64,000 nt of DNA from Asterias rubens (taxonomy: Eukaryota), in contig NC_047079.1 in NCBI RefSeq assembly GCF_902459465.1, positions 12,152,001 to 12,216,000 of the forward strand, written 5' to 3'. Made by a program: the position numbers and the translations under genes. A model generated the notes under the pieces. It ran no database searches. It was given only the letters and a program-made list of their open reading frames with translations, and had not been told where the DNA came from. This document shows positions 19,798 to 55,837 of the stretch, piece after piece (the first letter of the stretch is position 1; every line of letters begins with the position of its first letter).

Positions 19798-21168
19798 CTA
19801 CTTTAAACCTGGTTTGTAGTAGGTGTGTTTAATGCCAGTTGTTCCTGAGCTTGGTGCTGGGTCAACGTGCACAGTGACTTGGTGATTCCTTCTTTGCTGC
19901 TTGGGATCATGTGGCTGTGGTCGAAGGTAGCCATACTTAGGGCTGTCAGTCTCTACTTCAACCGGCTTGTAGTAGGTATCTTGTGTGGTAGTTGTTCGTG
20001 AGTCTGGTGTTGGGTCAACGTGCACAGCGACTTGGTGATTCCTTCTTTGCTCCTTGAGATGTGGCCGTGGTCGAAGGTAACCATCCTCTTGGCTTTCCTT
20101 CTCTGCTTCTTGTTTGGTAGTTGTAGCCGTAGTAGGTTCTGTGTATCCTGTGTTCTTGTCATCCGTTGGTTGCAGCGTCGTGTAGGGATCAGCTTTGGGC
20201 ATTTGAGATGTCTCGGTCTCTCTGATGACGCGTCTCATTTTGAAGATTTGAAATACACCAAGAATGATGATGATGGTGGATACACTGAGGGTAATTACAA
20301 ACGCTACAATCCATAGATTAAAAGAAGGGGTCTGGTTGGGTAGGGTTTGGGTTGGTGGGTGGGGCTGGTTGGGTTGGGTTGTCTCTGGTTCGATTGATGT
20401 TATTTCATTAGTCGCATCTGTCGAACTTGCTACACTGATTGGTCCAATGATACACGAACGTGTCATACTTGCACCACTCCCTTGTAATACAGAGCAGTTA
20501 AATGCAACACCATCGTCAGCAACAGTCACAGTCAAATTCAATGATAATGTATCCTTACCATCGACTCTTGAATATGTCCAGAGGTGGCTTCTGGGATCAG
20601 TCATTGGATGGGTTTCTATATCTGCAGGTTTACCAGTCTCAGACAGACATCTCAATTGTAGCTCTGTACCGGTGTCTACTGTGATAGGTCCAGAAGGGGA
20701 GCATATCGGGTACGATGGAGCTGACAGGAATACGCTGGATGTAGCTACAATTGTGTTCCCTCCTCCTCTGATAGGGTGGTTGACGTTACAAACATATTCA
20801 TCATAGTCGTCAATCTGCAGATAAGTAATCGTAAAGTCTTGAACAACCATCCCACTCTGTGGATAGGTTTTTTTGAACTTATACCGGTTAATGTTCGTTT
20901 GGTTAGAGTCTTTCCACCACAGAGTAGTATCGGGTTGAGTTGACCTCCACTCCACAATATGGTCCGACTCGAGGTTTGTAGCGTTACACATCATAACAAC
21001 TTGCCTGCCCATCCTACGATCGGCCTCTGGTGTTAAGATCACCGATGTCACCGACACCACTGGTTTGGGTGTTGCAATTGGTTGAGCAGTGACAGCCATC
21101 AGGAGTCCGCCTGCATCAAGTGAACACCAAACACACACCAGCAGCACTATAGACATCCTTCCATCCAT
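19798..21168 (-). CDS. Ig receptor A1: intronless SP-V-C2-TM receptor, 456 aa, Tyr-rich non-ITIM tail, probably C-terminally truncated
   Basis: Signal peptide MDGRMSIVLLVCVWCSL; V domain C..W..FTITYLQIDDYDEYVC; second Ig with 4 Cys; TM LWIVAFVITLSVSTIIIILGVFQIF; tail YTTL-x9-YTEP, 2x GYLRP and 2x TYYKP. Start set at the ATG shared by the paralogs (21168), not 21354. Confidence 0.88.
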   Translation of the reverse strand: MDGRMSIVLLVCVWCSLDAGGLLMAVTAQPIATPKPVVSVTSVILTPEADRRMGRQVVMMCNATNLESDHIVEWRSTQPDTTLWWKDSNQTNINRYKFKKTYPQSGMVVQDFTITYLQIDDYDEYVCNVNHPIRGGGNTIVATSSVFLSAPSYPICSPSGPITVDTGTELQLRCLSETGKPADIETHPMTDPRSHLWTYSRVDGKDTLSLNLTVTVADDGVAFNCSVLQGSGASMTRSCIIGPISVASSTDATNEITSIEPETTQPNQPHPPTQTLPNQTPSFNLWIVAFVITLSVSTIIIILGVFQIFKMRRVIRETETSQMPKADPYTTLQPTDDKNTGYTEPTTATTTKQEAEKESQEDGYLRPRPHLKEQRRNHQVAVHVDPTPDSRTTTTQDTYYKPVEVETDSPKYGYLRPQPHDPKQQRRNHQVTVHVDPAPSSGTTGIKHTYYKPGLK

Positions 21169-21403
21169 TGTATTGAATCTGGTTCCTTGAAGTTGTTTGA
21201 TGAAGAAGTTGGACGAGGATAGGGTTGGATGAAATAGCATGAGCAGACAGACAGCTTGTAGGAATGTAAGAGTGATTGTATTCATGTACCTGACTGACAA
21301 GGTAACTTGGTTGTACTTGTTTATAAAGCATCGCACACCAGTGAACTTCATCACGCACCGCTTAACTTCATCAATAATTTTGAGATTTGGGACGGGATGT
21401 TAT

Positions 21404-21446
21404 TGAGTCATGTAGTCACCAAATCTAAAACTATTTCCATTTATAG
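21404..21446 (-). promoter_or_regulatory. Candidate TATA (CTATAAAT) and AP-1 (TGACTCA) sites in the leader/promoter module upstream of A1
   Basis: TGAGTCA at 21404-21410 and ATTTATAG at 21439-21446. The AP-1 motif recurs intact in the homologous modules at ~18.77, 22.31 and 35.04 kb and is altered at ~30.03 and 33.72 kb. No transcript evidence. Confidence 0.3.
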
Positions 21447-22254
21447 TGGCGACGATTGATACAGAATTTGCATAACAATAATCAGTGTTTACATTCTAAA
21501 CGGTGATGTAATGAAAGAGTTAGGTTCGCGTAAATTAAGGATTTTTGCTACAAACCTAACAAAACTTGGCTGCAATTCCGCATGTTTAAGCGCTATTAAA
21601 AAAATTACTGAAATTACCACCACAAAAATCTAATCGCAATGTACTGTACCAACAAATATACAGTTTGTGTTAAATTTTTCCACTGTTTGTAATGTTTTAA
21701 GAGCCCCCTAAGTTTTTACTAAACACGGGTTGGGTAAAGGTATTCATAAACATTTTGTAATTATTTTTCTTAAGTATTTTTTGTACTGAGTTAATTGGTT
21801 AAAAACACCCGACTTTGTGTAGAATACTATGATTTTACCCATGAATTCGGAAGATTTGTCTTTACCGTTTGACCTCGTAAACTTGTTGCTAAATTATTTG
21901 TTTTCCGAATGATTTACAATAGATCAAAAGAATATTATGAAACTAAATCACTGCAAACAAATAATGTATTTACTTTCAAAAATGGTTCTTTGTTTCAGAT
22001 TCATTTGGATAAAGAAAACACATGTAAAAATATAACATTTTGGAAAACTAATGCAAAACACAAACATATAAATGACAGGATCAATAGGAAAATAAGTGGC
22101 TGCAACTCAATATAACTTCTTATCTAGCTACTATGGTTCAACAATTACAAAAAAGAAACAAAAGTTTTCATTTTGTTCTGCGTCATTTTACAATTTCTAA
22201 ACCGTATCCTGTTTGTTTGTCTGTTTGTTGAGATGGTTGTACAAGTTGCTTGTG

Positions 22255-22390
22255 CTCAGTATCACGCTCCAGTGAGCTTCTATTTTTGAGCTTTGGGATT
22301 TTATGTTTTGAGTCATGTTATTCAAAGAATCGTTATGTCCTATTGCCATAGTGGTGACGATTCAAATAGAATTTGCAGAATAATATTAAA
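22255..22390 (-). pseudogene. Diverged orphan copy of the receptor promoter/leader module
   Basis: atcacgctccagtgagcttc...ttgagtcatgt...tagtggtgacgatt...agaatttgca aligns by eye to the A1 upstream module. No coding sequence follows. Confidence 0.5.
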
Positions 22391-22422
22391 GTAGGATTTG
22401 AAACTTTGCATGGTGGAAATAC

Positions 22423-22637
22423 GATATGGAAAGGTTTGCGGTAACACCATGTAATGATTATCTCTAATAGAGTTGCGGTGGTTCTGAAAAAAACCGTTGG
22501 TTTCAACTCCTTTCTCCAGAAGACGATCAGAGCATACTGATCGAAACGTCGAGTTGAAACCAACCGTTCTTTTCAGAACCACCCCAACTCATTAGAGATA
22601 GTCATTACATGGTGTTACCGCAAACCTTTCCATATTG
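22423..22637. mobile_element. Foldback element with a hammerhead-like centre (half copy at ~55866-56005; related ends at 62385-62550)
   Basis: Arms atatggaaaggtttgcggtaacaccatgtaatga...ggtttcaactc / gagttgaaacc...catggtgttaccgcaaacctttccatat. Confidence 0.7.
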
Positions 22638-24934: not shown

Positions 24935-26129
24935 CTAATTGTAAAGATTCTGATATGGTCTCTCAGCTGAACTCGGTGGCTGTCTGACCGCTTCATAGTC
25001 GGTGTTGGTGCTGCCCTCTGGCCGAGCGTAGTCATACTCATGGCTGTCTGTCTCTACTTCAACTGGTTGGTAGTAGGTATCTTGTGTGGTAGTTGTAGCC
25101 GTAGTAGGTTCCATATAGACTTTGTTCTTGTCCTCCGTTGGTTGCAGCTCCATGTAGGGATCAGCTTTGGGGACTTGAGATGCCTCTGTCTTTCGAAGAC
25201 TTTTTATGATATGTCTCATTTTGAAGATTTGAAATACACCAAGAATGATGATGATGGTGGATACACTGAGGGTAATTACAATCCATAGATTAAAAGAAGG
25301 GGTCTGGTTGGGTAGGGTTTGGGTTGGTGGGTGGGGCTGGTTGGGTTGGGTTGTCTCTGGTTTGATTGATGTTATTTCATTAGTCGCATCTGTCGAACTT
25401 GCTACACTGATTGGTCCAATGATACACGAACGTGTCATACTTGCACCACTCCCTTGTAATACAGAGCAGTTAAATGCAACACCATCGTCAGCAACAGTCA
25501 CAGTCAAATTCAATGATAATGTATCCTCACCATCGACACTTGATGATGTCCAGGGGTAGCTACTGTAATCAGTTATTGGGTTGGTTCTTGTTATATCTGC
25601 TGGGTTACCAGTCTCAGATAGACATCTCAAAGGTAGCTCTGTACCGGTGTCTACTGCGATAGCTCCAGAAGGGGAGCATTCTGGATACGGCTGAGGTGAT
25701 GATAGTATAACCTCAGATGTTCCTTCAACATCCACGTACTGTCTAAAGCGTGTTCGAAAAACCAAACAACAAAAGTTAGCATTATAGTCATCAGTCTGCA
25801 GATCGATAATCATTGGTTAAGTTTTGAACAACCATTCCTCTCTCTGGATAAAATGTGGTGTAGAAAAACCGTCTGTTGTACCTTAATGGGTGATCAATCC
25901 GTCTCACGTAACAGATGTCAAAAGTACTCCACTCCACGATGTGATCCGACTCTAGGTTTGTAGCGGTGCACCTAATAATAATCTGCCCACCCAATTTACG
26001 ATCAGCCTCTGGTGTTAAGATCTCAGCAGACACTGTTGGTTGAGCAGTGACAACCATCAGGAGTCCACCTGAATCAAGGGAACACCAAACACACACCAGC
26101 AACACATACATAGACATTCTTCCATCCAT
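24935..26129 (-). pseudogene. Ig receptor A2: frameshifted SP-V-C2-TM gene with a complete class-A tail
   Basis: ORFs 25791-26306 and 24935-25813 join through a +4 nt shift near 25811-25814 (QNLT|IIDLQTDDY versus paralog QDFTITYLQIDDY). Tail has YMEL-x9-YMEP, TYYQP, YDYARP, TDYEAV, PYQNLYN. Confidence 0.85.
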
Positions 26130-32280: not shown

Positions 32281-32426
32281 TCAAAAACGGGTGTTCTTCT
32301 CTAATTGTAAATATTCTGGTATCGTCGCTCAGAATGTTGTGGCTGTGTGAGTACCACTTCATAGCCGGTGCTAGTGTCTCCCTCTTGGCGTTCGTTCTCT
32401 AAATCAACTGGTTGGTTGAAGGTGTG

Positions 32427-33497
32427 TTAAATAGTAGTTGCTTCTGGGTTTGGTGTTGGGTCAACGTGCACAGTGACTTGATGATTCCTTCTTTGCTCAT
32501 TGGGATCATGTGGCCGTGGTCGAAGGTAGCCATCTTGGCTCACGTTCTCTACTTCTTGTATGGTAGTTGTAGCCGTAGTAGGTTCCGTGTATCCTCTGTT
32601 CTTGTGATCCGTTGGTTGCAGCTTCGCGTAGGGATCAGCTTTGGGGACTTGAGATGCCTCAGTCTTTCCAAGACTATTTATGAGACGTGTCTTTTTGAAG
32701 ATTTGAAATGCACCAAGAATGATGGCGATGGTGGATACACTGAGGGTAACTACAAAAGCTACAAGCCATGGGATGTGGTTGGGTGGGTTCGGGGTCTCTG
32801 GTTGGATTTGGATTGGTCCAAAGATACACGAACGTGTCATTGTACCACTCCCTTGTAAAACAGAGCAGTTAAATGCAACACCATCATCAGCAACAGTTAC
32901 ATTCAAATTCAATGATAATGTATACTTACCATCGACACTTGATGACGTCCAGTTGTAGTTACTGGGATCAGTCATTGGATAGGGTTCTATATCTGCAGGG
33001 TTATCCGCCTCAGATATACATCTCAATTGTAGCTCTGTACCAATGTAGACTGGTTTAAGTCCGGAAGGGGAGCACACAGGATACGATGGAGCTGACAGGT
33101 TTACGCTGGATGTAGCTACAATTGTGCTCCCTCCTTTACTGAGAGGGTGGTGGACGTTACAAACATATTCATCATAGTCGTCAATCTGCAGATGATTAAT
33201 CGTAAAGGTTTGAACAATCTTCCCACTCTCTGGAGAACTTTTAGTGACCATAAACCGTATGCTGGAAATGTCCTTTATTGGTTTGTTGTCCCGCCTCCAT
33301 TCAATAAAGGAATCCGGCTGGAGGTTTGTAGCGTTACAATTCATCACCAACTTCCCACCCACGTTACGGTCAGCTTCTGGTGTTAAGATCTCAGCATACA
33401 CTTTTGGTTCAGCAGTGGCAACCATCAGGAGTCCGCCTGCATCAAGTGAACACCAAACACACACCAGCAACACATACATAGACATTCTTCCATCCAT
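32427..33497 (-). CDS. Ig receptor A3: intronless SP-V-C2-TM receptor, 356 aa, with a premature TAA (ancestral stop at 32301)
   Basis: Same domain layout; tail YAKL-x9-YTEP and GYLRP. 41 more in-frame codons (HTFNQPVDLENERQEGDTSTGYEVVLTQPQHSERRYQNIYN) follow the TAA and match the A2 terminus. Confidence 0.85.
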   Translation of the reverse strand: MDGRMSMYVLLVCVWCSLDAGGLLMVATAEPKVYAEILTPEADRNVGGKLVMNCNATNLQPDSFIEWRRDNKPIKDISSIRFMVTKSSPESGKIVQTFTINHLQIDDYDEYVCNVHHPLSKGGSTIVATSSVNLSAPSYPVCSPSGLKPVYIGTELQLRCISEADNPADIEPYPMTDPSNYNWTSSSVDGKYTLSLNLNVTVADDGVAFNCSVLQGSGTMTRSCIFGPIQIQPETPNPPNHIPWLVAFVVTLSVSTIAIILGAFQIFKKTRLINSLGKTEASQVPKADPYAKLQPTDHKNRGYTEPTTATTTIQEVENVSQDGYLRPRPHDPNEQRRNHQVTVHVDPTPNPEATTI

Positions 33498-34778: not shown

Positions 34779-34933
34779 NNNNNNNNNNNNNNNNNNNNNN
34801 NNNNNNNNNNNNNNNNNNNNNNNNNNNNNNNNNNNNNNNNNNNNNNNNNNNNNNNNNNNNNNNNNNNNNNNNNNNNNNNNNNNNNNNNNNNNNNNNNNNN
34901 NNNNNNNNNNNNNNNNNNNNNNNNNNNNNNNNN
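34779..34933. other. Assembly gap (155 N)
   Basis: Run of N directly after a palindromic MITE. Confidence 0.99.
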
Positions 34934-39364: not shown

Positions 39365-41167
39365 TTAACTTTGCAAGAACTGTTTTCTCATAACACTTGC
39401 GTACGTCACTGCATCAGAAGACGAAGGAGAAGCGAGTCCGCCGTCTTGAATCTCATCTGATTGCAAATCCAAATCAGCGTAGACAAGGTGGTCTGGGTTG
39501 TCATGGGTACCCTGCTGCCTCATGGGACGAGAGACCTGGGTATCAGTAGGATCACTGGGTGCTGGGTGGGCTTCCTCCTTGGTAGAGAGACCGGCATCTG
39601 GGTGCATTGGGATTGACACTGGGTGTATTTGGGATGGAACTGTCTGGTTGTCACTGTGAGTTAGGGGATTGCTACGCTGTGCTGATTTAGGCTGATAGGG
39701 TTTAGGCTTGGGGGGTTTTGACCGTGAGGATGGAATTGGTTTGACAGTTGCCGTCGGTTTGGGGGATGTGAGTAACCCGTCACGAGAGGGCCTTGTTGTT
39801 ACATCAGAGACATTAGAAACAGCGTATCGCTGACCGTTATCAGTGGTAGTAGGTTTAAATGATTGGTCTGGTTGCTGCCTCATCGACTCATGAGCAGGGG
39901 GGTGAGCTTGGTATGGTTTAGCGTATATTAGACTTGGATCAGTCGCCTGTGCTCTTTGTGCCGGCATTGTGCCGGACGCGTCAACGTCGCGGTGCTGAGT
40001 GCTTAAATACATGGTATTGTTCTGTAATCCTTCTTGTAACGTACCAAGACCTCCGCATTCATTAAGACTGATCTGAGAATCGTCAAGTCTATTAAGAGTT
40101 TGTTCAGTGTTTGTTTGGTTGTATGACTGTACCGGTTTGGGATCTGAGAATGCGAGGCGACGTTTACGGCAAGTGATGATCAGGATAATGGTGAGAAGAA
40201 GAGCTACGACTGCAGCGGAGACTATACCAGCGATGACTGCACGGCTGAATGGTGACGACGATGGTAACCTAGTGGTTTCGTTGAACGGAGTAAACGGTGT
40301 TTCAGATGGCTGTAAAGACGTAGTGTTGGTGATTGGTGTTGGGTTTCTCATCTCGGTTGATGTCATTGAAGACATAGACGGCATACATGTGGGAGTGGGT
40401 ACCGCTGTTGGCTGAGTTATTGTGATTGGTCCAATGGTACAAGAACGTGCCATATTGGGGAAAAACTGCGCTGATGTAATGGTGCATGTGAATACAATAC
40501 AATTATCAGCTACGCCTGCTATCGAACTAGATGTCCTGATGAGTGTATCGGTGTCAACAGTGATTTGTGATGTCCATGAAGTGAAGCTAGACGTATAAAT
40601 CGAAGTTGTGACTGCTGCTATGACTGCCGGATGACCGCTCTCAGATGTACATCTCATATTCAACACTGTTCCTTCGTTTACTGTAATGGGTCCATCTGGA
40701 GAGCATATAGGGAAGGATGCATTGGGGAAGTAAAACACTGAAAGTGTAACACTGGATGAGGCTATAACGTTGTACGCTCCATCTGGTGTGGGGGAAACGA
40801 CTTTGCAGCCATACCGATTGGAATCTTCCCTTTGGACATTGATGATGGTAAAGTCTTGAACTGTCCTCCCAGTTGTCATATCTTCCTGTGTACTAAACGT
40901 GAATCGTGACTCCGCGGTTACAGTTACATCCCCCAATCTCAAGACACGGTCTGGGTTTGTTGCGCTCCATGAAACTATGTAATCCGACTGGAGGTTCATA
41001 GCGGTGCACCTCAAATCAACCTGCCCGCCCTCCTTACGATCAGCATATTGTGTTAAGAACACCGCAGATACTGTTGTTCGAGCAGTGACAACCATCAGGA
41101 GTCCGCCTGCATCAAGTGAACACCAAACACACACCAGCAACACATACATAGACATCCTTCCATCCAT
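39365..41167 (-). CDS. Ig receptor B1: intronless SP-V-C2-TM inhibitory-type receptor, 600 aa, two ITIMs
   Basis: V domain ..FTIINVQREDSNRYGC; TM AVIAGIVSAAVVALLLTIILIITC; Pro/Ser/Thr-rich tail with LVYADL and VTYASV. Confidence 0.92.
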   Translation of the reverse strand: MDGRMSMYVLLVCVWCSLDAGGLLMVVTARTTVSAVFLTQYADRKEGGQVDLRCTAMNLQSDYIVSWSATNPDRVLRLGDVTVTAESRFTFSTQEDMTTGRTVQDFTIINVQREDSNRYGCKVVSPTPDGAYNVIASSSVTLSVFYFPNASFPICSPDGPITVNEGTVLNMRCTSESGHPAVIAAVTTSIYTSSFTSWTSQITVDTDTLIRTSSSIAGVADNCIVFTCTITSAQFFPNMARSCTIGPITITQPTAVPTPTCMPSMSSMTSTEMRNPTPITNTTSLQPSETPFTPFNETTRLPSSSPFSRAVIAGIVSAAVVALLLTIILIITCRKRRLAFSDPKPVQSYNQTNTEQTLNRLDDSQISLNECGGLGTLQEGLQNNTMYLSTQHRDVDASGTMPAQRAQATDPSLIYAKPYQAHPPAHESMRQQPDQSFKPTTTDNGQRYAVSNVSDVTTRPSRDGLLTSPKPTATVKPIPSSRSKPPKPKPYQPKSAQRSNPLTHSDNQTVPSQIHPVSIPMHPDAGLSTKEEAHPAPSDPTDTQVSRPMRQQGTHDNPDHLVYADLDLQSDEIQDGGLASPSSSDAVTYASVMRKQFLQS

Positions 41168-43679: not shown

Positions 43680-45092
43680 TCAACTTTGCAAGAACTGTTT
43701 TCTCATAACACTTGCGTACGTCACTGCATCAGAAGACGAAGGAGAAGGGAGTCCGCCATCTTGAATCTCATCTGATTGCAAATCCAAATCAGCGTAGACA
43801 AGGTGGTCTGGGTTGCCATGGGTACTCTGCTGCCCCATGGGACGAGAGACCTGGGTATAAGTAGGATCACTGGGTGCTTGGTGGGCTTCCTCCTGGGTAG
43901 AGAGACCGGCATCTGGGTGCGTTGGGATTGACACTGGGTGTGTTTGGGATGGAGCCATCTGGTTGTCACTGTGAGTTATGGGGTTGTTACGCTGTGCTGA
44001 TTTAGCCTGATAGGGTCTATTAAGAGTTTGTTCAGTGTTTGTTTGGTTGATGGACTGTACCGGTTTGGGATTTGAGGTTGCGAGGCGACGTCTACGGCAA
44101 GTTACGATCAGGATAATGGTGAGAAGAAGAGATACGACTGCAGCGGAGACTATACCAGCAATGACTGCAGGGCTGAATGAAGATGATACTAAATTAGAGG
44201 TATCGTTGAACGGAGTGATTGGTGTTGGGTAGCCCATCTCGTGGGGTGGCATTGAAGACGCAGTCAAACATAGTGTTCTAGTGGGAGTGGAGTCTGATGC
44301 GGAGGGGGTTATTGTTATTGGTCCAATGGTACAAGATCGTTCCATATTGGGGAAATTGACTGAAGTAATGGTGCATGTGAATGCAATACAATTATCAACT
44401 ACAACAGCTGTCAAACTAGAAGTCCTGATGAGTGTATCGGTGTCATTAAGAACTTGTGATGTCCATGGAGTGTATCTAGCAGTATAAAACGAGTGAGTGA
44501 CTACTGCTGTGACTGCCCGATGACTGCTCTCAGATGTACACTTCATATTCAACACTGTCCCTTCGTCTACTGTTATGGGCCCAGCTGGGAAGCAGATAGG
44601 GAAGGATGCATTGGGGAAGTAGAACACTGAAAGTGTAACACTGACTGAGGCTACAACGTCTTGCGCTGCTCCTCTTAGTGCGCTCCTCTCGGAACTGACT
44701 GTGCAGAAGTAATCATTAGAATCTTCCCTCTGCACATTGATGATGGTAAAGTCTTGAACAGTCATCCCAGTTATCGTATATTCCGTCGTGTTAAATAAGA
44801 ATCGTGGCCCTAAAGGGGGAACAGTTTCATTTCCAAATCTCAGGACCATCTTTGGACCTTCAGTGGTCCACGAAACAATGTGATTTGGCTGTAGGTTTGT
44901 AGCGGTACACCTTATGTCAACCTGCCCACCCTCCTTACGATCAGCCTCTGGTGTTAAGATCACCGCAGACACTTTCGGATCTGTTGTGGGTGTTACAACT
45001 GGTTGAGCAGTGACAACCATCAGGAGTCCGCCTGCATCAAGTGAACACCAAACACACAACAGCAACACATACATAGACATCCTTCCATCCAT
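43680..45092 (-). CDS. Ig receptor B2: inhibitory-type, 470 aa, short tail, two ITIMs
   Basis: Paralog of B1 with an in-frame ~129-aa tail deletion (LNR|PYQ). PTYTQV, LVYADL and VTYASV are retained. Confidence 0.92.
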   Translation of the reverse strand: MDGRMSMYVLLLCVWCSLDAGGLLMVVTAQPVVTPTTDPKVSAVILTPEADRKEGGQVDIRCTATNLQPNHIVSWTTEGPKMVLRFGNETVPPLGPRFLFNTTEYTITGMTVQDFTIINVQREDSNDYFCTVSSERSALRGAAQDVVASVSVTLSVFYFPNASFPICFPAGPITVDEGTVLNMKCTSESSHRAVTAVVTHSFYTARYTPWTSQVLNDTDTLIRTSSLTAVVVDNCIAFTCTITSVNFPNMERSCTIGPITITPSASDSTPTRTLCLTASSMPPHEMGYPTPITPFNDTSNLVSSSFSPAVIAGIVSAAVVSLLLTIILIVTCRRRRLATSNPKPVQSINQTNTEQTLNRPYQAKSAQRNNPITHSDNQMAPSQTHPVSIPTHPDAGLSTQEEAHQAPSDPTYTQVSRPMGQQSTHGNPDHLVYADLDLQSDEIQDGGLPSPSSSDAVTYASVMRKQFLQS

Positions 45093-47732
45093 TGTATTGA
45101 ATCTGATTCCTTGAAGTTGCTTGATAAGAAGTTGGATGAGTACAAAGTTGGATGAAATAGCATGAGCTGACACACAGCTTGTAGGAAAGTATTGAGTAAT
45201 ATTGAATGTGCATGCACTTAAATACCAAGTTTTGGTTGTATGTGCTTCCGTGTAATAAGCATCACACACCAGTGAACTTCGTCAATGATAATAACATGAA
45301 CTTAGAGTTGTGCTTTTAAATGAGGGCCATATTGTCGCGGGTAACTAAACCCGGATCCCACTGCCACACGTAGTAGTGACGATGTACATATAAATTGGAA
45401 AATATGCCTCAGGCTGGTTTCATATTCAAAGTTTTGAACTCTGAGGTGAATATTGGGAGAGGGTTGCGTGAAAGTAGGATTTTTGCTGCATATACTTGGA
45501 TGCGTTTCCGCTTATTTTCAAGCACCACACGCCACTACTTTACGTGACTGACAGTGTGAGAAGCACAGCTGTGGTAACTTCAATGAATGTTTTGAGTCAA
45601 AATAGTTGTTAGCATAACAACTTACTTGGTAACAAGCAATGGAGAGCTGTTGATAGTATAAAACATTGTGAGAAACGGCTGCCTCTGAAGTAACGTAGTT
45701 TTTGAGAAAGAAGTTACTCACTTAAATATTTGAATTTAATTCGAGACCTCAGCTGAGGTCTAGAAGTCAAGCATCTGAAAGCACAACCTGAGTTTACAAG
45801 GGTGTTTTTTCTCCCATAATTCTCTCGCTCGCAACTTCGATGACCAAATGAGTTCAAATTTTCACAGTTTGGTAGTTTGTTCATGTTGAGATACACCAAG
45901 TGAGAAGACTGGTCTTTGAAAGTTATCAAAGGTTTCCACTGGTCGATTTCACAAAGAGTTAGGACTAGTCCTAACTCAGGACTAGTCCTAAGAGATATCA
46001 AAAATGTACAGCTAGTCCTAAGTTAGGACGGGTAACTCGTCCTAACTCGAGATAAGACTAGTCCTAACTCTTTGTGAAATCCACTCCTGGTGCATTTAAC
46101 TGCTCCATTTTTGTTTTGACAAGAACAAGCTATTAGTTTTTTTCTGGTTTTGTGTGTGTTGAACCTTTTAGAACGAGGATTCGGACATGGGAAGCAAAAT
46201 CATGAGTTAGTAAATCGCAAAAAGTTTGAGCAAAAAAAATCAAGACTGTGTGTCTTGATCGGTTGTGCCGTAACTTGATGCCCAATAAAGAAAGTGTTTG
46301 ACCCCGGGGAAAGGCAGTGGATATTTTGAGCTCTGTACAAAAGTATATCATGAAAATAGATATGTACAACAAAAACAGTTCAATGATAAGATATAGGAAG
46401 CTAAAATATAATTTTTATTATTTTTAGATTGCCAACACTAATGTACATGGTGCTGGGTAAAATCAAACTGAGTGAATTCGGTATTAATTAATGTTACAGC
46501 TATAAAACGAAGCGTGTTTAGATATCGGATTTGTTTTTTACAATGCAAGAAATGTGCAGAAGTTTAACAAACAAACAAGTTTTAAAAAGCAAAATAACCA
46601 ACGATTTAGTGTTTAGTCAAACAGGTCAGTTGTTAATTTATTGGTATTTAATTTTATTATGTGGCACAAATTTTGCTATGCCTCGAATCAAGCATTACTC
46701 CGGTCTGTATACGTTTAGTAATGACTGAAAATAAATGCGATACAAAAACTTGAGTGGTAAAAAGTAAAGCAGCTTGGAAAGTTAAAGGAACACGTTGCCT
46801 TGGATCAAGTTTTTGACTCCCATGAATGGCCGACCGTGTTAGCTCGCAAAGTAAAAGAAAAACCACGCAATTTCGAGGCAAATGTGTGTGGATAATTGGA
46901 TTCTACTTTTAAAACATCTTTCTAACCATATTTTATAACAAACGGTTACAAACGCTTTTCAAATACATACTCGACCGATCCCACCCGCAGGCAACGTGTT
47001 CATTTAAGTGCGTTTAGAGAAACAAGAGCTGCGTTTATGGAAAAATACGTCACTTTTCATCCCCCAATACTTGAATATAAAAAGCGTTAGCACGGTAACG
47101 CTTCTCAGATTGTGTATTCCTATAGGGATTTTTTTCAGCATGCACATAATATTAGCTCTGAAAATTGTCGATGTCTCAAAAACGTGACCACCTTTTGGAA
47201 TGAAATGTTCAGAGGTTGGTTTAATTGTATGTACAGTGTATCTACATTTATATAATAGACGATGTGACCTGTGACACCACATGTTTACAAAAGAGCCACC
47301 AAGCTTGGACTTCCTGCAGGCACGATTTATACATGCAGCCTAAGGGAAGGATACATAAAATCTTATATTTTATTGAGATTGCACTGTCAAACTTTTGTCA
47401 ACTTTTGATATGATGAAATGGGGCACATCTCAAAACTTGTCCAGCTTTTACTTTCATGACTCTTGGATTGATGTGGAAATCATGACACAAAATGTAAACT
47501 TGCCCATAATGACCAGTGCAGTATCTTGCCTGCCTGACTAGCCAAAGAATGTACAAGGTTACACTTATTGTAAACAAAGTTCACATGGTCTATATGATTA
47601 AAACAAAAGATATACAATGCCTTTAAGCTTCTCTTTGAGAATGTTTCTTGTTCTATAAAAACTGTTTTTTTGTCGCAGTTTATTGGTTGAACTAGGAGCT
47701 AAGAAAACCCTTCAACTTTGCAAGAACTATTT

Positions 47733-49493
47733 TCACATAACACTTGCGTACGTCACTGCATCAGAAGACGAAGGAGAAGGGAGTCCGCCATCTTGAATCT
47801 CATCTGATTGCAAATCCAAATCAGCGTAGACAATGTGATCTGGGTTGCCATGGGTACTCTGCTGCCTCATGGGACGAGAGACCTGGGTATAAGTAGGATC
47901 ACTGGGTGCTGGGTGGGCTTCCTCCTGGGTAGAGGGATCGGCTTCTGGGTGCATTGGGATTGACACTGGGTGTATTTGGGATGGAGCCATCTGGTTGTCA
48001 CTGTGAGTGAGGGGGTTGTTACGCTGTGCTGATTTAGGCTGATAGGGTTTAGGCTTGGGGGGTTTTGACCGCGAAGATGGAATTGGTTTGACAGTTGCCG
48101 TCGGTTTGGGGGATGTGAGTAACCCGTCACGAGAGGGCCTTGTTGTTACATCAGAGGCATTAAAAACAGCGTAACGCTGATCGTGGTCAGTGGTTGGTTC
48201 CAATGACTGGTCTGGTTGCTGCCTCAGCGACTCATGAGCAGTAGGGTGAGCTTGGTGTGGTTTAGCGTATATTAAACTCGGATCAGTCGCCTGTGCTCTT
48301 TGTGCCGGCATTGTGCCGGACGCGCCCACGTCGTGGTACTGAGTGCTTAAATACATGTTATTGTTCTGTAATCCTTGTAATGTATCACGACCTCCGTATT
48401 CACTGGGACTGATCCGAGTATTGTCAAGTCTACTAAGATTTAGTTCAGTGTTTGTTTGGCTGTTGGACTGTACCGGTTTGGGATTTGAGGTTGCGAGGTG
48501 ACGTTTACGGCAAGTTACGATCAGGATAATGGTGAGAAGAAGTGCTACGACTGCAGCGGAGACTATACCAGCGATGACTGCATGACTGAATGAAGATGAT
48601 ACTAAAGTAGAGGTATCGTTGAACGGAGTGGACGGTGTTTCAGATGGTTTGATGGAAGAAGTAGGCATTGGTGTTGGGTTTCCCATCTTGGTTGATGGCA
48701 TTGAAGACGCAGTCATACATGGTGTTCTAGTGGGAGTGGGGTCTGGTGCGGAGGGAGTTATTGTTATTGGTCCAATGGTACAAGATCGTTCCATATTGGG
48801 GAAATTGACTGAAGTAATGGTGCATGTGAATGCAATACAGTTATCATCTTCGTCAGCTTTCAAACTAGATCTCCTGATGAGTGTATCGGTGTCTTCAATA
48901 ACTTGTGATGTCCATGGAGTGTATCTAGCAGTATAAAACGAGTGACTGACTATTGCTGTGACTGCCCGATGATTGCTCTCAGATGTACACTTCATATTCA
49001 ACACTGTTCCATTGTTTAATGTAATGGGTCCAGCTGGGAAGCAGATAGGGAAGAATGCATTGGGGCAGTATAAAACTGAAAGTGTTACACTGGATGAGGC
49101 TATAGTGTTGTACGCTCCATCTGTTGTGGGGTCATTGACTTTGCAGACATACCGATTGGAATCTTCCCTCTGCACATTGATGATGGTAAAGTTTTGAACT
49201 GTCCTCCCAGTTGTCATATCTTCCTGTGTACTAAACATGAATCGTGACTCCGCGGTTACATTTACATCTCCCAATCTCAAGACACGGTCTGGGTTTGTTA
49301 GGCTCCATGAGACAATGTGATCCGACTGGAGGTTCATAGCGGTGCACCTCATATCAACCTGCCCGCCCTCCTTACGATCAGCCTCTGGTGTTAAGATCTC
49401 AGCAGACACGTATGGTTGAGCAGTGACAACCATCAGGAGTCCGCCTGCATCAAGTGAACACCAAACACACACCAGCAACACGTACATAGACAT
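47733..49493 (-). CDS. Ig receptor B3: inhibitory-type, ~586 aa, two ITIMs
   Basis: The first ATG is mutated to ATT (49503-49505), so the start is placed at the second Met (MSMYVLL). IVYADL and VTYASV are present; the stop falls one residue after the last ITIM. Confidence 0.88.
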   Translation of the reverse strand: MSMYVLLVCVWCSLDAGGLLMVVTAQPYVSAEILTPEADRKEGGQVDMRCTAMNLQSDHIVSWSLTNPDRVLRLGDVNVTAESRFMFSTQEDMTTGRTVQNFTIINVQREDSNRYVCKVNDPTTDGAYNTIASSSVTLSVLYCPNAFFPICFPAGPITLNNGTVLNMKCTSESNHRAVTAIVSHSFYTARYTPWTSQVIEDTDTLIRRSSLKADEDDNCIAFTCTITSVNFPNMERSCTIGPITITPSAPDPTPTRTPCMTASSMPSTKMGNPTPMPTSSIKPSETPSTPFNDTSTLVSSSFSHAVIAGIVSAAVVALLLTIILIVTCRKRHLATSNPKPVQSNSQTNTELNLSRLDNTRISPSEYGGRDTLQGLQNNNMYLSTQYHDVGASGTMPAQRAQATDPSLIYAKPHQAHPTAHESLRQQPDQSLEPTTDHDQRYAVFNASDVTTRPSRDGLLTSPKPTATVKPIPSSRSKPPKPKPYQPKSAQRNNPLTHSDNQMAPSQIHPVSIPMHPEADPSTQEEAHPAPSDPTYTQVSRPMRQQSTHGNPDHIVYADLDLQSDEIQDGGLPSPSSSDAVTYASVM

Positions 49494-49810
49494 CCTTCCA
49501 TCAATTGTATTGAATCTGATTCCTTGAAGTTGTTTGATAAGAAGTTGGATGAGGATAGGGTTGGATGAAATAGCATGAGCAGACACACAGCTTGTAGGAA
49601 AGTATTGAGTAATATTGAATGTGCATGCACTTAAATACCAAGTTTTATATGTATGTACTTCCGTGTAATAAGCATCACACACCAGTGAACTTTGTCAATG
49701 ATATGAACTTTTAGAGTTATGTTTTTCAATGAGGGTCATAATTTCACAGGTAACTTGAACCCGGATTGTACTGCCACACGTAGTAGTGACGATTTACATA
49801 TAATTTACCT

Positions 49811-52610: not shown

Positions 52611-52785
52611 TAAGAAACAATTGCAACGTTGTGACGTCATACATGGCTGTTTTCGAAGCTACGGCTTGGGCTTCAGAATAGAGATGTGGTTATCGCCCGG
52701 CTGTTTGAAGAGCCCTGCACAGCCAGAGCCTTAAACAGAGCCCAAAGCCAAAACCGTAGTTTCGAGAAGGGACTCTGTACCATGC

Positions 52786-53166
52786 TTAAAGGCAGTGGAC
52801 CCTATTGGTAATTACTCAAAGTAATTATTAGCATAAAACCTTACTTAGTAACGAGTAATGGGGAGAGGTTGATAGTATACAACATTCTGAGAAACGGCTC
52901 CCTCTGAAGTGCCATAGTTTTTGAGAAAAAAAGTAATTTTCCACGAATTTGATTTCGAGACCTCAGATTTAGAATTTTGAGGTCTCGAAATCAAGCATCT
53001 GAAAGCACACAAATTTGTGTCACAAGGGTGTTTTTTCATTCATAGTTATCTCGCAACTTCGAAGACCAATTGAGCTCAAACTTTCACAGGTTTGTTTATT
53101 TTATGCATACGTTGAGATACACCAAGACTGGTCTTTGACAATTACCAATAGTGTCCACTGTCTTTA
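52786..53166. mobile_element. MITE family 1
   Basis: ttaaaggcagtggaccctattggtaatt ... aattaccaatagtgtccactgtcttta. Confidence 0.8.
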
Positions 53167-53963
53167 GGTGTGTCCAGTGTACTGATGCTAATGCAATCTT
53201 GTACTGAAAGTTTGTACATAAATGTGAATGTCACTACAATGAAAAGCTTTATACGGTTGAGTGCCTCCGCCCAGTCGCGATAGAGCACACACTTATGCAA
53301 TAGCCATGTAGACTTGTATTAGGCGTCTCATCATTTTTTGACGCAACAGGTAGTCCTTGTTATCATTTTAGACTTGTGTTATGCGTCTCATCATTTTTGA
53401 CGCTACAGTAAGGACAGTCCTTGTTTCACACCACGCTATGAGCCATTTAGGAGGAACTAGTAACGAGTCTAACACATGTCTAAGGAACGACTCAACTTTC
53501 TGAAATTGTCTATTATAACCCTCATGGATTTAAATTTACAAAATGTACACATTGTTTATACGGTGTGCATAGCACGTTCTAAAATGAACATAACTTGACA
53601 ACTGAAATTAAATAGCTTTAAAGCCTGTTATAGTATGCTACATTTGGATATAAGACGCGTGAGCTGTTTTTGGTTTTAAATTAAACTTTGTCAAATACCT
53701 CTTGCTTATAATATCTCAGAGTGCAAATAATGAAAACGCGCACGTGTGAGACGCGCCATGCGTATTCCTGGCCATTGAGATGGCCAAAGGTCTAGTACAG
53801 TATTAGCCTTTTTAAGATATGGTGGACAGTATACGAGTGCACTGTTTGGTTTGGGTGTATACTGGCAAATTCACCAAACCTGTTATTATAGTAATGTTTC
53901 CATCAAAATGTCAAAATTGCGTTTGGTTACACAATGCATATTCAAGTCTAATTCAAGTGCAAT

Positions 53964-54187
53964 GGGTGCGTTCGATTAGCTTCCCTGGCTCGACCCCAGT
54001 CTGCCCCCGGTACGTTCGAATAGCTTTGACGGCATTCCAGGGGCACACCCGGGTCAACCCCCAAGTGCCCTGCTTGTGGAACATGTAACCTGGGGCTGGC
54101 CCGCGGTGCACAACTACACCACGAATGTCAGGGGCTCACCGGAGTGAGCAGGGGTCGACCCAGGGGGAAGCTAATCGAATGCACACT
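53964..54187. mobile_element. Foldback MITE (gggtgcgttcg TIR family) just 3' of the B4 stop
   Basis: gtgcgttcgattagcttccc.. / ..gggaagctaatcgaatgcac. Confidence 0.7.
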
Positions 54188-54205
54188 TTATAACCGTGTT
54201 GATGT

Positions 54206-55837
54206 TTACGTTGTCGTAACAGTTGCGTACACTACTTGACCATCATCGGCTGGTGACGGCTTTGAGATGTCTGCCCTTGTGTCTGCTTGCAAATCCAAAT
54301 CAGCGTAGACAATACCATCTTGGTTGTCATGACTACTAGGCTGCCTCTTGGGTACACTAGAGACTTCAGCATAAGTTGGGTCGTCGGGCAAGATGGTTTC
54401 GTCTTGGGGAACGGTGGGGGATTGGAAAGGCATAAGGTTCTCTTGGTGGTTCAGATTATTGTCAGGAATCTTATGGCTTGATTTGGGCTTATAAGGCTGA
54501 GGTTTTTTAGGTGGTTTGGCCGCCATTGGTTTAACCGTTGCTACTGGTTTACCAGTAGATGCATAGGAGTGGTCTTTGGCTGGTGACGTCACGATATCTT
54601 GATCAAACACAGGGTTATCGTAAGTCTGCTCTGTCGAGATGGGTTGCCTCATCACAGCTGGTGAATTATCCATGTTCGATTTGACTTTATTAGGCTGAGC
54701 GTATATTGGACCTGTTTGTATGTTGGATTCTGAATGTCTTGGTGATGCGGTACGTCGTGGTGATGCAGGATTTGCATCGCGAGTGGTCTGAGATGTAGTC
54801 TGGATCGACTCAAGTCCAGCGTATTCGTTGAAGCTTTGACGGGGGATCTCGGTCGATTCCTCGGGGTTTGATTGACCCGCGCCTAGCTTGGTATCCTTCG
54901 GAAACAGAGCACACTTGAAGAGGCCTCGTCTTAGGCAAATGATTATTAGGATCGTGATGAGTAGAATAGCAGCTACGCCCCCAACGGCTGCCCCTATGAT
55001 CACCGCTAAGTTACTGCTTGGTGTGTTTGGCACAGTCGTAATAGACGTTGTGGATGTTATCATGTTTGTAGTCTCTACACTTCCTATAGTTGTTGCAGTT
55101 TCAGCGACGTTAATGGGCCCGATTGTACAAGAAGCTTTCATTGAAGGGAAATAGAACAGAGATGTAACGGTACAATCAAATGTGATGTTATCTACTGGGG
55201 CATTTACCAATAACATCAATGATGACTCAATCGTGCTCGATCCAACGGTTGATGATGCCCATGTATAGCTATTTGACTGAGCTGGGACTTGGGTTACCGC
55301 TACTGCTACTAATGGATTGCCAATCTCACTTGAGCATTTCAGGTATAAATTCGTTCCTTCATCAACTGTCAGAGGTCCTGCAGGGAAACATTCAGGGAAA
55401 GACGGGCTTGGGAAATATAACACTGAAAGTGTTACCCTTGATGAAGCCACGGCGTTGCTGCCTCCAGTCGAAATTGGTTGGTAGACAGTACACACATATT
55501 CATCAGTATCACTCCTCTGCACATTCATTATAGTAAAATCCTGAACGGTTGAAATGCTGGTATACCGTGTATTAAACACAAACCTTGACTGTGTAGTAAT
55601 TCTAGTCGCACCCCATATTAAGACTTTCTCAGGGTCCTCAGTCCTCCATGCTACGATGTCACCTGCCCCGAGGTTCGTAGCGGTACACGTCATGTCAACC
55701 TGCCCACCCTCCTTACGATTAGCCTCTGATGTTAAGATCACCGCACCCACTGTTGGTTGAAGTTGTGCAGTGACAACCATCAGGAGTCCGCCTGCATTAA
55801 GTGAACACAACAGCAAAATCAACATCATTCGATCCAT
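54206..55837 (-). CDS. Ig receptor B4: divergent inhibitory-type paralog, 543 aa, two ITIMs
   Basis: MDRMMLILLLCSL signal; V domain ..FTIMNVQRSDTDEYVC; TM with GxxxG (GAAVG); PTYAEV, IVYADL and VVYATV. Confidence 0.92.
   Translation of the reverse strand: MDRMMLILLLCSLNAGGLLMVVTAQLQPTVGAVILTSEANRKEGGQVDMTCTATNLGAGDIVAWRTEDPEKVLIWGATRITTQSRFVFNTRYTSISTVQDFTIMNVQRSDTDEYVCTVYQPISTGGSNAVASSRVTLSVLYFPSPSFPECFPAGPLTVDEGTNLYLKCSSEIGNPLVAVAVTQVPAQSNSYTWASSTVGSSTIESSLMLLVNAPVDNITFDCTVTSLFYFPSMKASCTIGPINVAETATTIGSVETTNMITSTTSITTVPNTPSSNLAVIIGAAVGGVAAILLITILIIICLRRGLFKCALFPKDTKLGAGQSNPEESTEIPRQSFNEYAGLESIQTTSQTTRDANPASPRRTASPRHSESNIQTGPIYAQPNKVKSNMDNSPAVMRQPISTEQTYDNPVFDQDIVTSPAKDHSYASTGKPVATVKPMAAKPPKKPQPYKPKSSHKIPDNNLNHQENLMPFQSPTVPQDETILPDDPTYAEVSSVPKRQPSSHDNQDGIVYADLDLQADTRADISKPSPADDGQVVYATVTTT

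What the first reader, a model, noticed from the sequence alone, without database searches (positions are those of the whole stretch)
20700..55760. Diversity concentrates in V-domain loops equivalent to CDR2 and CDR3, on a conserved framework
Seen: the framework (ILTPEADRKxGGQV..CxAxNL..IVxW ... VQxFTI..xQxxD...YxC ... VAxSSVxLS) is kept, but the segment after the Trp differs almost completely: RSTQPDTTLWWKDSNQTNIN, STFDICYVRRIDHPLRYNR, RRDNKPIKDISSI, TTEGPKMVLRFGNETVPPLGP, RTEDPEKVLIWGATRITTQS. The post-Cys loop also differs, including in length: NVNHPIRGGGNT, LVFRTRFRQYVD, TVSSERSALRGAAQD, KVVSPTPDGAYN, TVYQPISTGGSN. Signal peptides, leaders and ITIM regions of the same genes are near-identical. 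Inference: diversifying selection on a ligand-binding face.
Basis: partly seen in the sequence, partly recalled or inferred. Interest (0 to 1): 0.7.

Follow-up and report, generated by a model that had tools for sequence, protein, structure and literature searches.

The report
Variable-loop Ig receptor genes, sea star
Seven neighbouring starfish genes for antibody-like surface receptors do differ most in the loops of their tip domain, but this comes mainly from segment swapping between gene copies and loose constraint, with only weak signs of selection for novelty.

Summary
All ten quoted peptides are real, on the minus strand. They lie in seven tandem single-ORF genes (G1-G7, 19.8-55.8 kb) of an Asterias rubens family with at least 91 matches genome-wide. 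The proteins run signal peptide, V-like Ig domain, C2-like domain, stalk, TM, tail. The N gap lies between genes.

Variability is concentrated in the block from the C-strand Trp to the E strand and in the F-G loop: 1.96 against 1.01 bits, p=1e-6. The CDR1-equivalent loop is conserved.

Selection is not demonstrated:
- Loop dN/dS is 0.7-0.9 with segment-specific trees, 0.91 in four A. amurensis orthologue pairs and 0.82 in twelve independent closest pairs.
- Synonymous divergence in the post-Trp segment is as high as nonsynonymous.
- F-G loops barely change between orthologues.
- M2a finds a class with omega 2.3-5.7 confined to loop sites. With synonymous-rate variation only the G4-G6 clade stays significant (p=0.002).
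- A per-site test finds nothing beyond chance.

Gene segments reject each other's trees (AU p<0.004), so paralogues exchange segments.

ITIM pairs exist only in G4-G7. G7's signal peptide differs.

The scan had already noted related intronless Ig-receptor pairs elsewhere in this genome.

The parts
19798..21168 (-). G1: single-ORF receptor gene, 456 aa. Signal peptide, V-like D1, C2-like D2, stalk, TM, Tyr-rich tail without ITIM.
   Evidence: The syntenic A. amurensis orthologue is at L033:14899-16224.
24935..26129 (-). G2: the same architecture, but the reading frame breaks inside the E strand at about 25794-25816.
   Evidence: The A. amurensis orthologue P0029 is intact at 411 aa.
32427..33497 (-). 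G3: 356 aa. It has a short post-Trp segment. The tail ends early; its homologous continuation lies in another frame at 32304-32426.
39365..41167 (-). G4: 600 aa, with a long tail ending in two ITIMs.
43680..45092 (-). G5: 470 aa, ITIM tail. This is the gene whose ectodomain was modelled.
47733..49505 (-). G6: 590 codons, ITIM tail. The canonical start codon reads ATT, and the next ATG is codon 5. Its V block is G4-like and its D2 and tail are G5-like.
   Evidence: The A. amurensis orthologue at L035:17072-19180 has ATG.
54206..55837 (-). G7: 543 aa, ITIM tail, divergent signal peptide.
   Evidence: The orthologue P0041 is 92% identical.
20848..20946 (-). G1 variable block after the C-strand Trp: C-C' loop, C', C'-D loop, D strand, D-E turn.
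25833..25928 (-). G2 variable block after the Trp.
33219..33296 (-). G3 variable block after the Trp, 7 residues shorter than in the other genes.
40865..40966 (-). G4 variable block after the Trp. It is 95% nt-identical to G6's block.
44763..44867 (-). G5 variable block after the Trp.
49203..49304 (-). G6 variable block after the Trp.
55550..55645 (-). G7 variable block after the Trp.
20752..20787 (-). G1 F-G loop (CDR3 equivalent). It is identical in the A. amurensis orthologue.
25730..25765 (-). G2 F-G loop.
33123..33158 (-). G3 F-G loop, similar to G1's.
40769..40804 (-). G4 F-G loop.
44658..44702 (-). G5 F-G loop, 3 residues longer than in the other genes. It is modelled as a short helix.
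49107..49142 (-). G6 F-G loop. It is identical in the orthologue.
55454..55489 (-). G7 F-G loop. It is identical in the orthologue.
39392..39487 (-). G4 pair of ITIMs, LVYADL and VTYASV, with the tyrosines 26 residues apart.
43707..43802 (-). G5 pair of ITIMs.
47739..47834 (-). G6 pair of ITIMs.
54218..54313 (-). G7 pair of ITIMs, IVYADL and VVYATV.
44883..45282 (-). Conserved 5' module, shown here for G5: about 190 nt upstream, the signal peptide and strands A to C. The coding half is 79-85% nt-identical in at least 27 loci on eight chromosomes.
34779..34933 (.). Assembly gap. It is intergenic, between G3 and G4, and is part of no gene of the family.

Best explanation
The region is a tandem array of seven single-exon genes from a large, fast-evolving Asterias family of type I membrane receptors. 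Each protein has a signal peptide, a V-like Ig domain, a C2-like Ig domain, a Ser/Thr/Pro stalk, a TM segment and a tail.

G4-G7 end in two ITIMs 26 residues apart. That is the spacing which suits tandem-SH2 phosphatases of the SHP type; this reading is inferred. G1-G3 carry a Tyr-rich tail without ITIMs.

Sequence differences pile up in two places in the tip domain: the block from the C-strand Trp to the E strand, and the F-G loop. I explain this by three things.
1. These segments are under weak constraint (omega 0.7-1.0). Strands A-C, E-F and the D2 domain are under clear purifying selection (omega 0.4-0.6).
2. The family grows by duplication and loss.
3. Paralogues exchange gene segments, so each gene is a mosaic. 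The 5' module is kept alike across the family, and old, diverged loop cassettes are carried and re-dealt. This is why synonymous divergence in the loops is as high as nonsynonymous.

A minority of loop sites, roughly 10%, may also be under diversifying selection. The case is best in the G4-G6 clade.

Shown: gene anatomy, the variability map, the omega values, the mosaic structure, and orthologue behaviour.

Inferred: ligand binding by the variable surface, inhibitory signalling, and an immune or cell-recognition role.
For: Anatomy and family:
- Long intact ORFs of 456-600 codons, an Ig domain by Pfam, and invariant Cys, Trp and Cys.
- At least 91 six-frame matches in the genome, all as single ORFs.
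- AF2 model of the ectodomain with pLDDT 88 and two beta-sandwich domains.
- The nearest folds are V-C2 adhesion and recognition proteins: Rst, Neph1, SYG-1, CADM, Kirrel, JAM, butyrophilin.
- ITIM pairs in G4-G7.

Variability map.

Constraint:
- Partition omegas with own trees: framework 0.49-0.53 and D2 0.57-0.59, both below 1 at p<1e-10. Loops 0.83-0.93, not significantly different from 1.
- 33 of 111 sites are under significant negative selection, mostly in the framework.

Mosaicism:
- Four gene segments each reject the trees of the other three (AU p from 4e-3 to 1e-79).
- The nearest paralogue switches from segment to segment. For example, L006 is 96% like L019 in the loop block but 94-96% like L007 in F-G/G and D2. 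G6 equals a G4-type V plus a G5-type D2 and tail.
- pS ranges from 0.05 in the signal peptide to saturation elsewhere within one gene pair.
- The signal peptide has omega 0.94 and the shortest tree, so it is kept alike at the DNA level and not by protein-level selection.

Orthologues:
- Synteny with A. amurensis has flanks 91-97% identical, while coding windows fall to 71-85%.
- Loop omega is 0.91, and the F-G loops are almost unchanged.
- Twelve independent pairs give loop omega 0.82.

Residual selection signal.
Against: - Standard site-class tests are strongly significant, and they place the omega>1 class only in the loops, in the whole family and in three separate clades. In the G4-G6 clade this survives synonymous-rate variation (p=0.0017, omega 5.1 at 10% of sites). 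Selection may therefore be a bigger part of the story than I allow.
- The site models are my own code. It reproduces the IQ-TREE likelihood, but branch lengths are fixed up to one scale factor and optimisation is by Nelder-Mead.
- Alignment inside the loops is uncertain between subfamilies.
- Exchange between chromosomes is inferred from incongruent trees, not seen as events. Nucleotide-level constraint on the 5' module would look the same as homogenisation.
- No expression data were obtained. G2, G3 and G6 carry defects, so part of the array may be decaying.
Confidence: 0.55

Rival explanations
1. Diversifying selection on a ligand-binding surface is the main cause of the loop diversity. New amino acids in the C-C'/C'-D/D-E block and the F-G loop are repeatedly favoured, as in KIR, NITR or allorecognition receptors.
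For: - M2a against M1a gives 2dlnL 69 for the V domain and 33 for the loops, and 18, 39 and 25 in three clades, with omega2 of 2.3-5.7.
- All high-posterior sites lie in the loops. The framework shows no signal.
- The G4-G6 clade remains significant with synonymous-rate variation (p=0.0017).
- F-G and D-E have omega 1.2-1.5 in independent close pairs.
- Orthologous coding DNA is more diverged than its flanks.
Against: - Region-average omega is at or below 1 by three independent routes.
- Synonymous divergence in the post-Trp segment equals nonsynonymous divergence. That segment is significantly below 1 in close pairs (0.55, p=0.02).
- F-G loops are nearly invariant between orthologues.
- The signal falls to p=0.012, 0.07 and 0.23 when synonymous rates vary.
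- The per-site test is at chance level.
- Pervasive recombination inflates such tests.
Confidence: 0.25
2. Purely neutral drift. The loops are simply unconstrained parts of an Ig fold in a redundant family that is partly decaying. There is no selection for change and no special role for the variable surface.
For: - Loop omega is 0.8-0.9 and not different from 1.
- G2 has a frame break, G3 has a truncated tail, and G6 has lost its canonical ATG.
- No RNA evidence was found.
- G5 is not in the protein collection by exact look-up. Neither the G5 nor the G7 search returned an A. rubens protein matching the query.
Against: - Conserved positions inside the loops (Pro, Leu, Gly and the RF motif) are under significant negative selection.
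- ORFs of 456-600 codons stay open in both species.
- The framework, D2 and the tails have omega well below 1.
- The site-class heterogeneity within the loops is significant even with synonymous-rate variation.
Confidence: 0.15

Closest known systems
Vertebrate leukocyte-receptor-complex families (KIR, LILR, chicken CHIR)
   Same: - Tandem arrays of type I Ig-domain receptors.
- Some members have a pair of ITIMs about 26-30 residues apart; sister genes have other tails.
- Birth-and-death evolution with domain and segment exchange, and fast turnover between close species.

The family features come from my own knowledge and from the abstracts of PMC1458963 and PMC1559706 listed.
   Different: - Those receptors use C2/I-type domains encoded by separate exons. 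Here a V-like plus a C2-like domain sit in one exon.
- Their activating forms have a charged TM residue and short tails. G1-G3 have an uncharged TM and long Tyr-rich tails.
- There is no sequence relationship beyond the Ig fold.
Teleost NITR / NILT V-type immune receptors
   Same: Clustered multigene families with an N-terminal V-type domain, hypervariable CDR-like regions, and ITIM or activating variants. This rests on my own knowledge and on the abstract of PMC3022915 listed.
   Different: - NITR V domains carry a J-like G-x-G motif in the G strand. That motif is absent here: the G strand reads VVASVSVTL in G5.
- Those genes have introns.
- The CDR1 equivalent is conserved here.
Invertebrate IgSF allorecognition families (Hydractinia Alr; Botryllus receptors)
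   Same: Lineage-restricted clusters of IgSF membrane proteins with a variable V-like first domain and ITIM/ITAM-like tails. This comes from the abstract of bioRxiv 10.1101/2022.03.04.482883 and from PMC12582321, both listed.
   Different: Those systems are defined by extreme allelic polymorphism and by genetics of fusion and rejection. Neither is known for this locus. Homology was not tested.
Kirrel/Neph/SYG-1/Rst and CADM/nectin adhesion proteins, and the intronless echinoderm gene kirrelL
   Same: - These are the best structural matches for D1-D2. Foldseek against PDB gives E 3e-11, TM 0.5-0.59 and 19-20% identity. Swiss-Prot models of CADM3/4 and Kirrel1-3 also match.
- kirrelL is also intronless in all echinoderms examined (PMC8903837).
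   Different: - Kirrel proteins have five Ig domains and are conserved single genes. These genes have two domains and number in the dozens.
- Sequence profiles do not single out Kirrel. CEACAM, antibody light chains and SYG-2 score alike.
- Relationship to kirrelL itself was not tested here.
Sea urchin 185/333 (SpTransformer) genes
   Same: An echinoderm multigene family whose members align as mosaics of sequence blocks ('elements') that are present or absent. This comes from the abstract of PMC1831783; PMC1988830 describes the gene family (both listed).
   Different: 185/333 genes are not IgSF. Their diversity lies in the presence or absence of elements, not in the loops of a fold. That the proteins are secreted is my own knowledge.

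Membership tests
Immunoglobulin superfamily domain (Pfam Ig_3 PF13927 / ig PF00047) | Profile match above the curated cut-off. | tested here: met
   - ig: 23.2-30.5 bits against a cut-off of 21.8 in G3-G7.
- Ig_3: 41.6 in G3 and 30.2 in G7, against a cut-off of 30.
- G1 is below both cut-offs.

Immunoglobulin superfamily domain | B-strand Cys, C-strand Trp and F-strand Y-x-C. | tested here: met
   Invariant C61, W74, Y125 and C127 in the six-gene alignment. They sit on strands B, C and F of the model.
V-set Ig domain (PF07686) | Profile match above the cut-off, and C' and C'' strands. | tested here: inconclusive
   - V-set scores are 15-24.8 bits against a cut-off of 26.
- The model has a C' strand (residues 52-56) but only a two-residue C'' bridge (59-60).
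- The domain is therefore V-like or I-like.
Antigen-receptor-type V-J domains (Ig/TCR/NITR) | J-like F/W-G-x-G motif in the G strand. | tested here: not met
   No G-x-G in the G strand of any of the seven genes.
ITIM-bearing inhibitory receptors | (S/I/V/L)-x-Y-x-x-(I/V/L) in the cytoplasmic tail, usually as a pair. | tested here: met
   G4-G7 each have two, with the tyrosines 26 residues apart. G1-G3 have none.
ITIM-bearing inhibitory receptors | Tyrosine phosphorylation and recruitment of SHP/SHIP phosphatases. | not testable with these tools
   This needs biochemistry.
Genes under diversifying selection (site-model sense) | A class of codons with omega>1 that is robust to synonymous-rate variation and recombination. 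| tested here: inconclusive
   - Constant synonymous rate: significant everywhere.
- With synonymous-rate variation: p=0.012 for the loops, and 0.23, 0.07 and 0.0017 by clade.
- The per-site test is at chance level.
- Recombination is present.
Echinoderm kirrelL-like intronless Ig genes | Sequence relationship to KirrelL. | not tested
   - No KirrelL sequence was available by reference.
- Only fold-level similarity to Kirrel D1-D2 was seen.
- Absence of introns is shared.

The most novel reading that the evidence does not exclude
An echinoderm counterpart of the vertebrate leukocyte receptor complex. It would be a repertoire of about 90 germline-encoded paired receptors, some with ITIMs and some with Tyr-rich tails. 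Diverged cassettes for the C-C'/C'-D/D-E block and the F-G loop would be re-dealt among paralogues by gene conversion behind a homogenised 5' module. This would generate recognition diversity used in sea-star immunity or allorecognition, with selection acting on about 10% of loop sites.
Probability: 0.2. Interest if true: 0.7.

Novelty: new member of a known kind. Interest (0 to 1): 0.45.

Why it matters
Paired inhibitory and other-tailed Ig-receptor arrays that diversify quickly are central to vertebrate innate recognition. Comparable systems in invertebrates are few and unrelated to one another.

This family is large. By these searches it is confined to Asterias, and the public annotation names members only as 'uncharacterized' or 'mucin-5AC-like'. 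I found no paper describing it in the library searched.

Its clear mosaic structure and its well-resolved synteny with a sister species make it a usable case for a specific question: how much receptor diversity comes from segment exchange, and how much from selection?

For the scan itself the lesson is methodological. 'Variable loops on a conserved framework' is not evidence of positive selection when synonymous divergence tracks nonsynonymous divergence.

Tried and rejected
- **Expression.** Two run searches and the single read-laying run gave only short contigs covering genes and spacers alike, which is DNA-like. Two metatranscriptomes held 5-8% of G7's sampled words. Expression therefore remains untested.
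- **Variants.** Seven variant positions in G5's V domain in run X3 were 5 nonsynonymous and 2 synonymous. They may come from cross-mapped paralogues, so I did not use them.
- **Missing orthologues.** Orthologues of G3 (middle part), G4 and G5 in A. amurensis could not be reached. The fetched loci stop about 200 bases upstream of G5's start codon, so G5 is not covered. The gene at the G3 position there has a different V middle.
- **Timeouts.** A codon-model tree search in IQ-TREE timed out. It was replaced by nucleotide trees plus codon fitting. The first clade-wise script also timed out and was rerun.
- **Not run.** M7/M8 models were not run.
- **Literature.** Four searches found no description of this family in sea stars.
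- **KirrelL.** A lead from the scan's earlier notes pointed to KirrelL. I checked it only at fold level and in one paper. A sequence test was not possible without typing in sequences.
- **Kirrel by sequence.** The PDB sequence profile search gave only generic IgSF hits, so I rejected a specific Kirrel assignment by sequence.
- **Assembly gap.** The idea that the assembly gap affects the finding is rejected.

Full report
**What is there.**
They belong to seven tandem genes, each read as one long open frame:
- G1 19798-21168
- G2 24935-26129
- G3 32427-33497
- G4 39365-41167
- G5 43680-45092
- G6 47733-49505
- G7 54206-55837

The assembly gap at 34779-34933 lies in the spacer between G3 and G4. 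No ORF of the family touches it, so continuity across it has no bearing on the finding.

Each product has a signal peptide, an N-terminal Ig domain, a second Ig-like domain, a Ser/Thr/Pro-rich stalk, one TM segment and a tail.
- The N-terminal domain matches Pfam ig and Ig_3 above cut-off in most genes. V-set and I-set scores are just below cut-off.
- Cys, Trp and Y-x-C are invariant.
- G4-G7 end in two ITIMs, LVYADL or IVYADL and then VTYASV or VVYATV, with the tyrosines 26 residues apart.
- G1-G3 have Tyr-rich tails without ITIMs and uncharged TM segments.

**Which genome, how big a family.**
Two family members elsewhere in the genome are 100% identical to proteins named as Asterias rubens. 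A six-frame search of the assembly finds at least 91 matches, nearly all as single long ORFs. They lie in clusters on C19, C13, C1, C21, C6 and other chromosomes.

[quoted passage not shown] G5's exact sequence is not in the protein collection. Neither the G5 search nor the G7 search returned an A. rubens protein matching the query. G7's A. amurensis orthologue is in the collection (P0041, 92% identical).

**Structure.**
An AlphaFold2 model of the G5 ectodomain (pLDDT 88) gives D1 the following strands, in mature numbering:
- A 10-15, B 27-35, C 41-47, C' 52-56
- a two-residue C'' bridge at 59-60
- D 68-75, E 80-88, F 96-104, G 116-124

A second sandwich domain follows. The nearest solved folds are D1-D2 of Rst, Neph1 and SYG-1, then Dpr, butyrophilin, Fabs and nectin. 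Among Swiss-Prot models the nearest are CADM3/4, IGSF5, Kirrel1-3, tapasin and JAM-C. All are at 13-20% identity. A sequence profile hits only generic IgSF chains.

The 'post-Cys loop' is the F-G loop.

**The observation.**
Column entropy over 25 A. rubens paralogues is 1.96 bits in the C-C', C'-D, D-E and F-G elements, against 1.01 elsewhere (Mann-Whitney p=1.3e-6). For the six intact window genes it is 1.43 against 0.88 (p=2e-4).

The variable part after the Trp is one contiguous block of about 35 residues that also takes in the D strand and the D-E turn. The B-C loop, which is the CDR1 equivalent, is among the most conserved parts (0.85 bits), and so is the A-B region (0.46 bits).

The side claims are only partly right.
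- Signal-peptide DNA is 94-97% identical among G2-G6, but G7's is about 65%.
- Only G4-G7 have ITIMs. Only the G4-G6 tails are near-identical.
- G4 and G6 share the loop block at 95%.

**Is it selection? Region averages.**
Paralogue pairs show synonymous divergence in the post-Trp segment as high as nonsynonymous. G5/G6 give pS 0.37 and pN 0.43; G5/G4 give 0.43 and 0.39; L006/L007 give 0.71 and 0.33.

I fitted a Goldman-Yang codon model to each partition on its own tree.

| Partition | omega | Tree length per codon |
|---|---|---|
| Post-Trp segment | 0.73-0.76 | 24-25 |
| D/D-E | 0.86-1.04 | 16-17 |
| F-G loop | 0.70-0.73 | 31-32 |
| All loops | 0.83-0.93 (not different from 1) | 24-25 |
| Strands A-C | 0.41-0.44 | 7.5-7.7 |
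| E-F | 0.38-0.40 | 10.6-11.4 |
| Framework | 0.49-0.53 | 9.4-9.7 |
| D2 | 0.57-0.59 | 11.1-11.7 |
| Signal peptide | 0.94 | 3.7-3.8 |

The A-C, E-F, framework and D2 partitions are all below 1, at p from 2e-6 to 3e-13. The loops change about three times faster than the framework at synonymous and nonsynonymous sites alike. The signal peptide is kept alike at both kinds of site, which points to DNA-level homogenisation or DNA-level constraint and not to protein-level selection.

**Orthologues.**
Loci fetched from A. amurensis are syntenic with window 14.1-34.5 kb and 45.3-64 kb. Noncoding flanks are 91-97% identical, while coding windows drop to 71-85%.

Codon comparison of G1, G2, G6 and G7 with their syntenic copies gives these omegas:
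- loops 0.91 (33.5 nonsynonymous and 10.5 synonymous differences)
- framework 0.62
- D2 0.45
- tail 0.53

Loops against framework is not significant (Fisher p=0.29). The F-G loops carry only four nonsynonymous changes in four genes and are identical in G1 and G7.

Twelve phylogenetically independent closest pairs give these omegas:
- loops 0.82 (p=0.32 against 1)
- framework 0.60 (p=0.005)
- F-G 1.19
- D-E 1.51
- post-Trp 0.55 (p=0.02 below 1)

**Site models.**
I wrote a codon-likelihood routine. It reproduces IQ-TREE's log-likelihood to two decimals.

With a constant synonymous rate, M2a against M1a gives:
- 2dlnL=69.4 for the V domain (omega2 2.7 at 12% of sites)
- 33.3 for the loops on their own tree
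- 1.6 for the framework

Every high-posterior site lies in the C-C', C'-D, D-E or F-G elements.

Three less saturated clades give 18.2, 39.4 and 25.1. When synonymous rates may vary (gamma distribution, three classes), these fall as follows:
- loops 8.9 (p=0.012, omega2 1.5)
- C13 clade 2.95 (p=0.23)
- G1-G3 clade 5.3 (p=0.07)
- G4-G6 clade 12.8 (p=0.0017, omega2 5.1 at 10% of sites)

A per-site test with site-specific synonymous and nonsynonymous rates and segment trees finds 6 of 111 sites with beta>alpha at p<0.1, which is what chance gives. It finds 33 sites under negative selection. The codons that M2a flags in the C-C' loop also have high synonymous rates.

**Recombination.**
I split the gene into four segments: signal peptide plus A-C; the loop block; E to G; and D2. 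Each segment rejects the ML trees of the other three (deltaL 37-288; AU p from 4e-3 to 1e-79; 25 sequences).

The nearest paralogue changes from segment to segment, and G6 combines a G4-type V block with a G5-type D2 and tail. The coding half of the 5' module is 79-85% nt-identical in at least 27 loci on eight chromosomes, while loop blocks are 50-70% identical.

Such mosaicism explains the high synonymous divergence in the loops. It is also a known cause of false positives in site-class tests; that last point is established knowledge, not tested here.

**Reading.**
The best-supported account is a fast birth-and-death family in which weakly constrained loop segments, many of them old and diverged, are re-dealt among paralogues behind a homogenised 5' module. 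Selection for amino-acid change may act at a small set of loop sites, with the best case in the G4-G6 clade.

Several steps are inferred only:
- that the variable surface binds a ligand;
- that the ITIM genes signal through SHP-type phosphatases;
- that the family serves immunity or cell recognition.

By standard Ig topology the C-C' loop lies at the opposite end of the domain from the F-G and C'-C'' loops. The variable residues may therefore line the C-C'-F-G sheet edge used by adhesion-type IgSF proteins, and not a CDR-like tip. I could not compute this because model coordinates are not exposed.

**Known relatives and novelty.**
In working principle the array resembles vertebrate KIR, LILR and CHIR clusters, teleost NITR/NILT, and invertebrate IgSF allorecognition families. 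Its fold is closest to Kirrel- and CADM-type V-C2 pairs. It lacks the J motif of antigen-receptor V domains.

Earlier notes of this scan describe other intronless Ig-receptor pairs in the same genome and propose a link to the echinoderm gene kirrelL, which is intronless (PMC8903837). I could test that link only at fold level.

I found no paper on this family. I file it as a new member of a known kind.

**Limits.**
- No expression evidence was obtained.
- Loop alignment between subfamilies is uncertain.
- My site models fix branch lengths up to one scale factor.
- G2 has a frame break, G3 has an early tail stop, and G6 has ATT in place of the start ATG, so these three may not be functional.

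Noticed in passing
window 18303-18761 and 19541-19768 (- strand): Orphan copies of the family's 5' module lie downstream of G1. Each has the leader and signal peptide and then runs into unrelated sequence. They match the 5' modules of G2-G6 at 76-84%, and the A. amurensis syntenic locus has matching sequence.
   Followed up: partly
window 49503-49505: G6's canonical start codon reads ATT. The next in-frame ATG is codon 5 and would still give a signal peptide. The A. amurensis orthologue has ATG.
   Followed up: partly
window 25794-25816: G2's reading frame breaks inside the E strand of the V domain. The A. amurensis orthologue (P0029, 411 aa) is intact and shares G2's unusual F-C-C motif and F-G loop.
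   Followed up: partly
L033:1068-2393 (A. amurensis), syntenic with window G3: The gene at the G3 position in A. amurensis shares G3's upstream region, first ~180 coding bases and 3' end at 85-88%. Its V-domain middle is different, with a much shorter post-Trp segment. This looks like a replaced segment.
   Followed up: partly
window 19363-22382 against L033:13033-16662: Orthologous coding DNA is more diverged than its noncoding flanks. 60-nt coding windows fall to 71-85% identity, while flanks are mostly 92-100%. Synonymous divergence is 0.10-0.13, roughly twice the flank divergence.
   Followed up: partly
window 16397-16937: A Pro/Gly-rich low-complexity stretch is open in several frames on both strands, with a local GC of 0.44 and GC skew of -0.2. 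It is probably a simple repeat.
   Followed up: no
window 56380-58040: A run of similar ORF-like units repeats about every 270-340 nt on both strands. It looks like a tandem repeat or satellite, downstream of the array.
   Followed up: no
window 44644-44809: Contigs of one public run (X3) differ from the window at seven places in G5's V domain, 5 nonsynonymous and 2 synonymous. They may be alleles or cross-mapped paralogues.
   Followed up: partly
G000:C13:15.09-15.14 Mb (L005-L008, L010, L018-L020, L022, L024): A second dense cluster of the family mixes two kinds of member: V+D2 genes, and V-only genes that keep the Tyr-rich tail and lack D2.
   Followed up: partly
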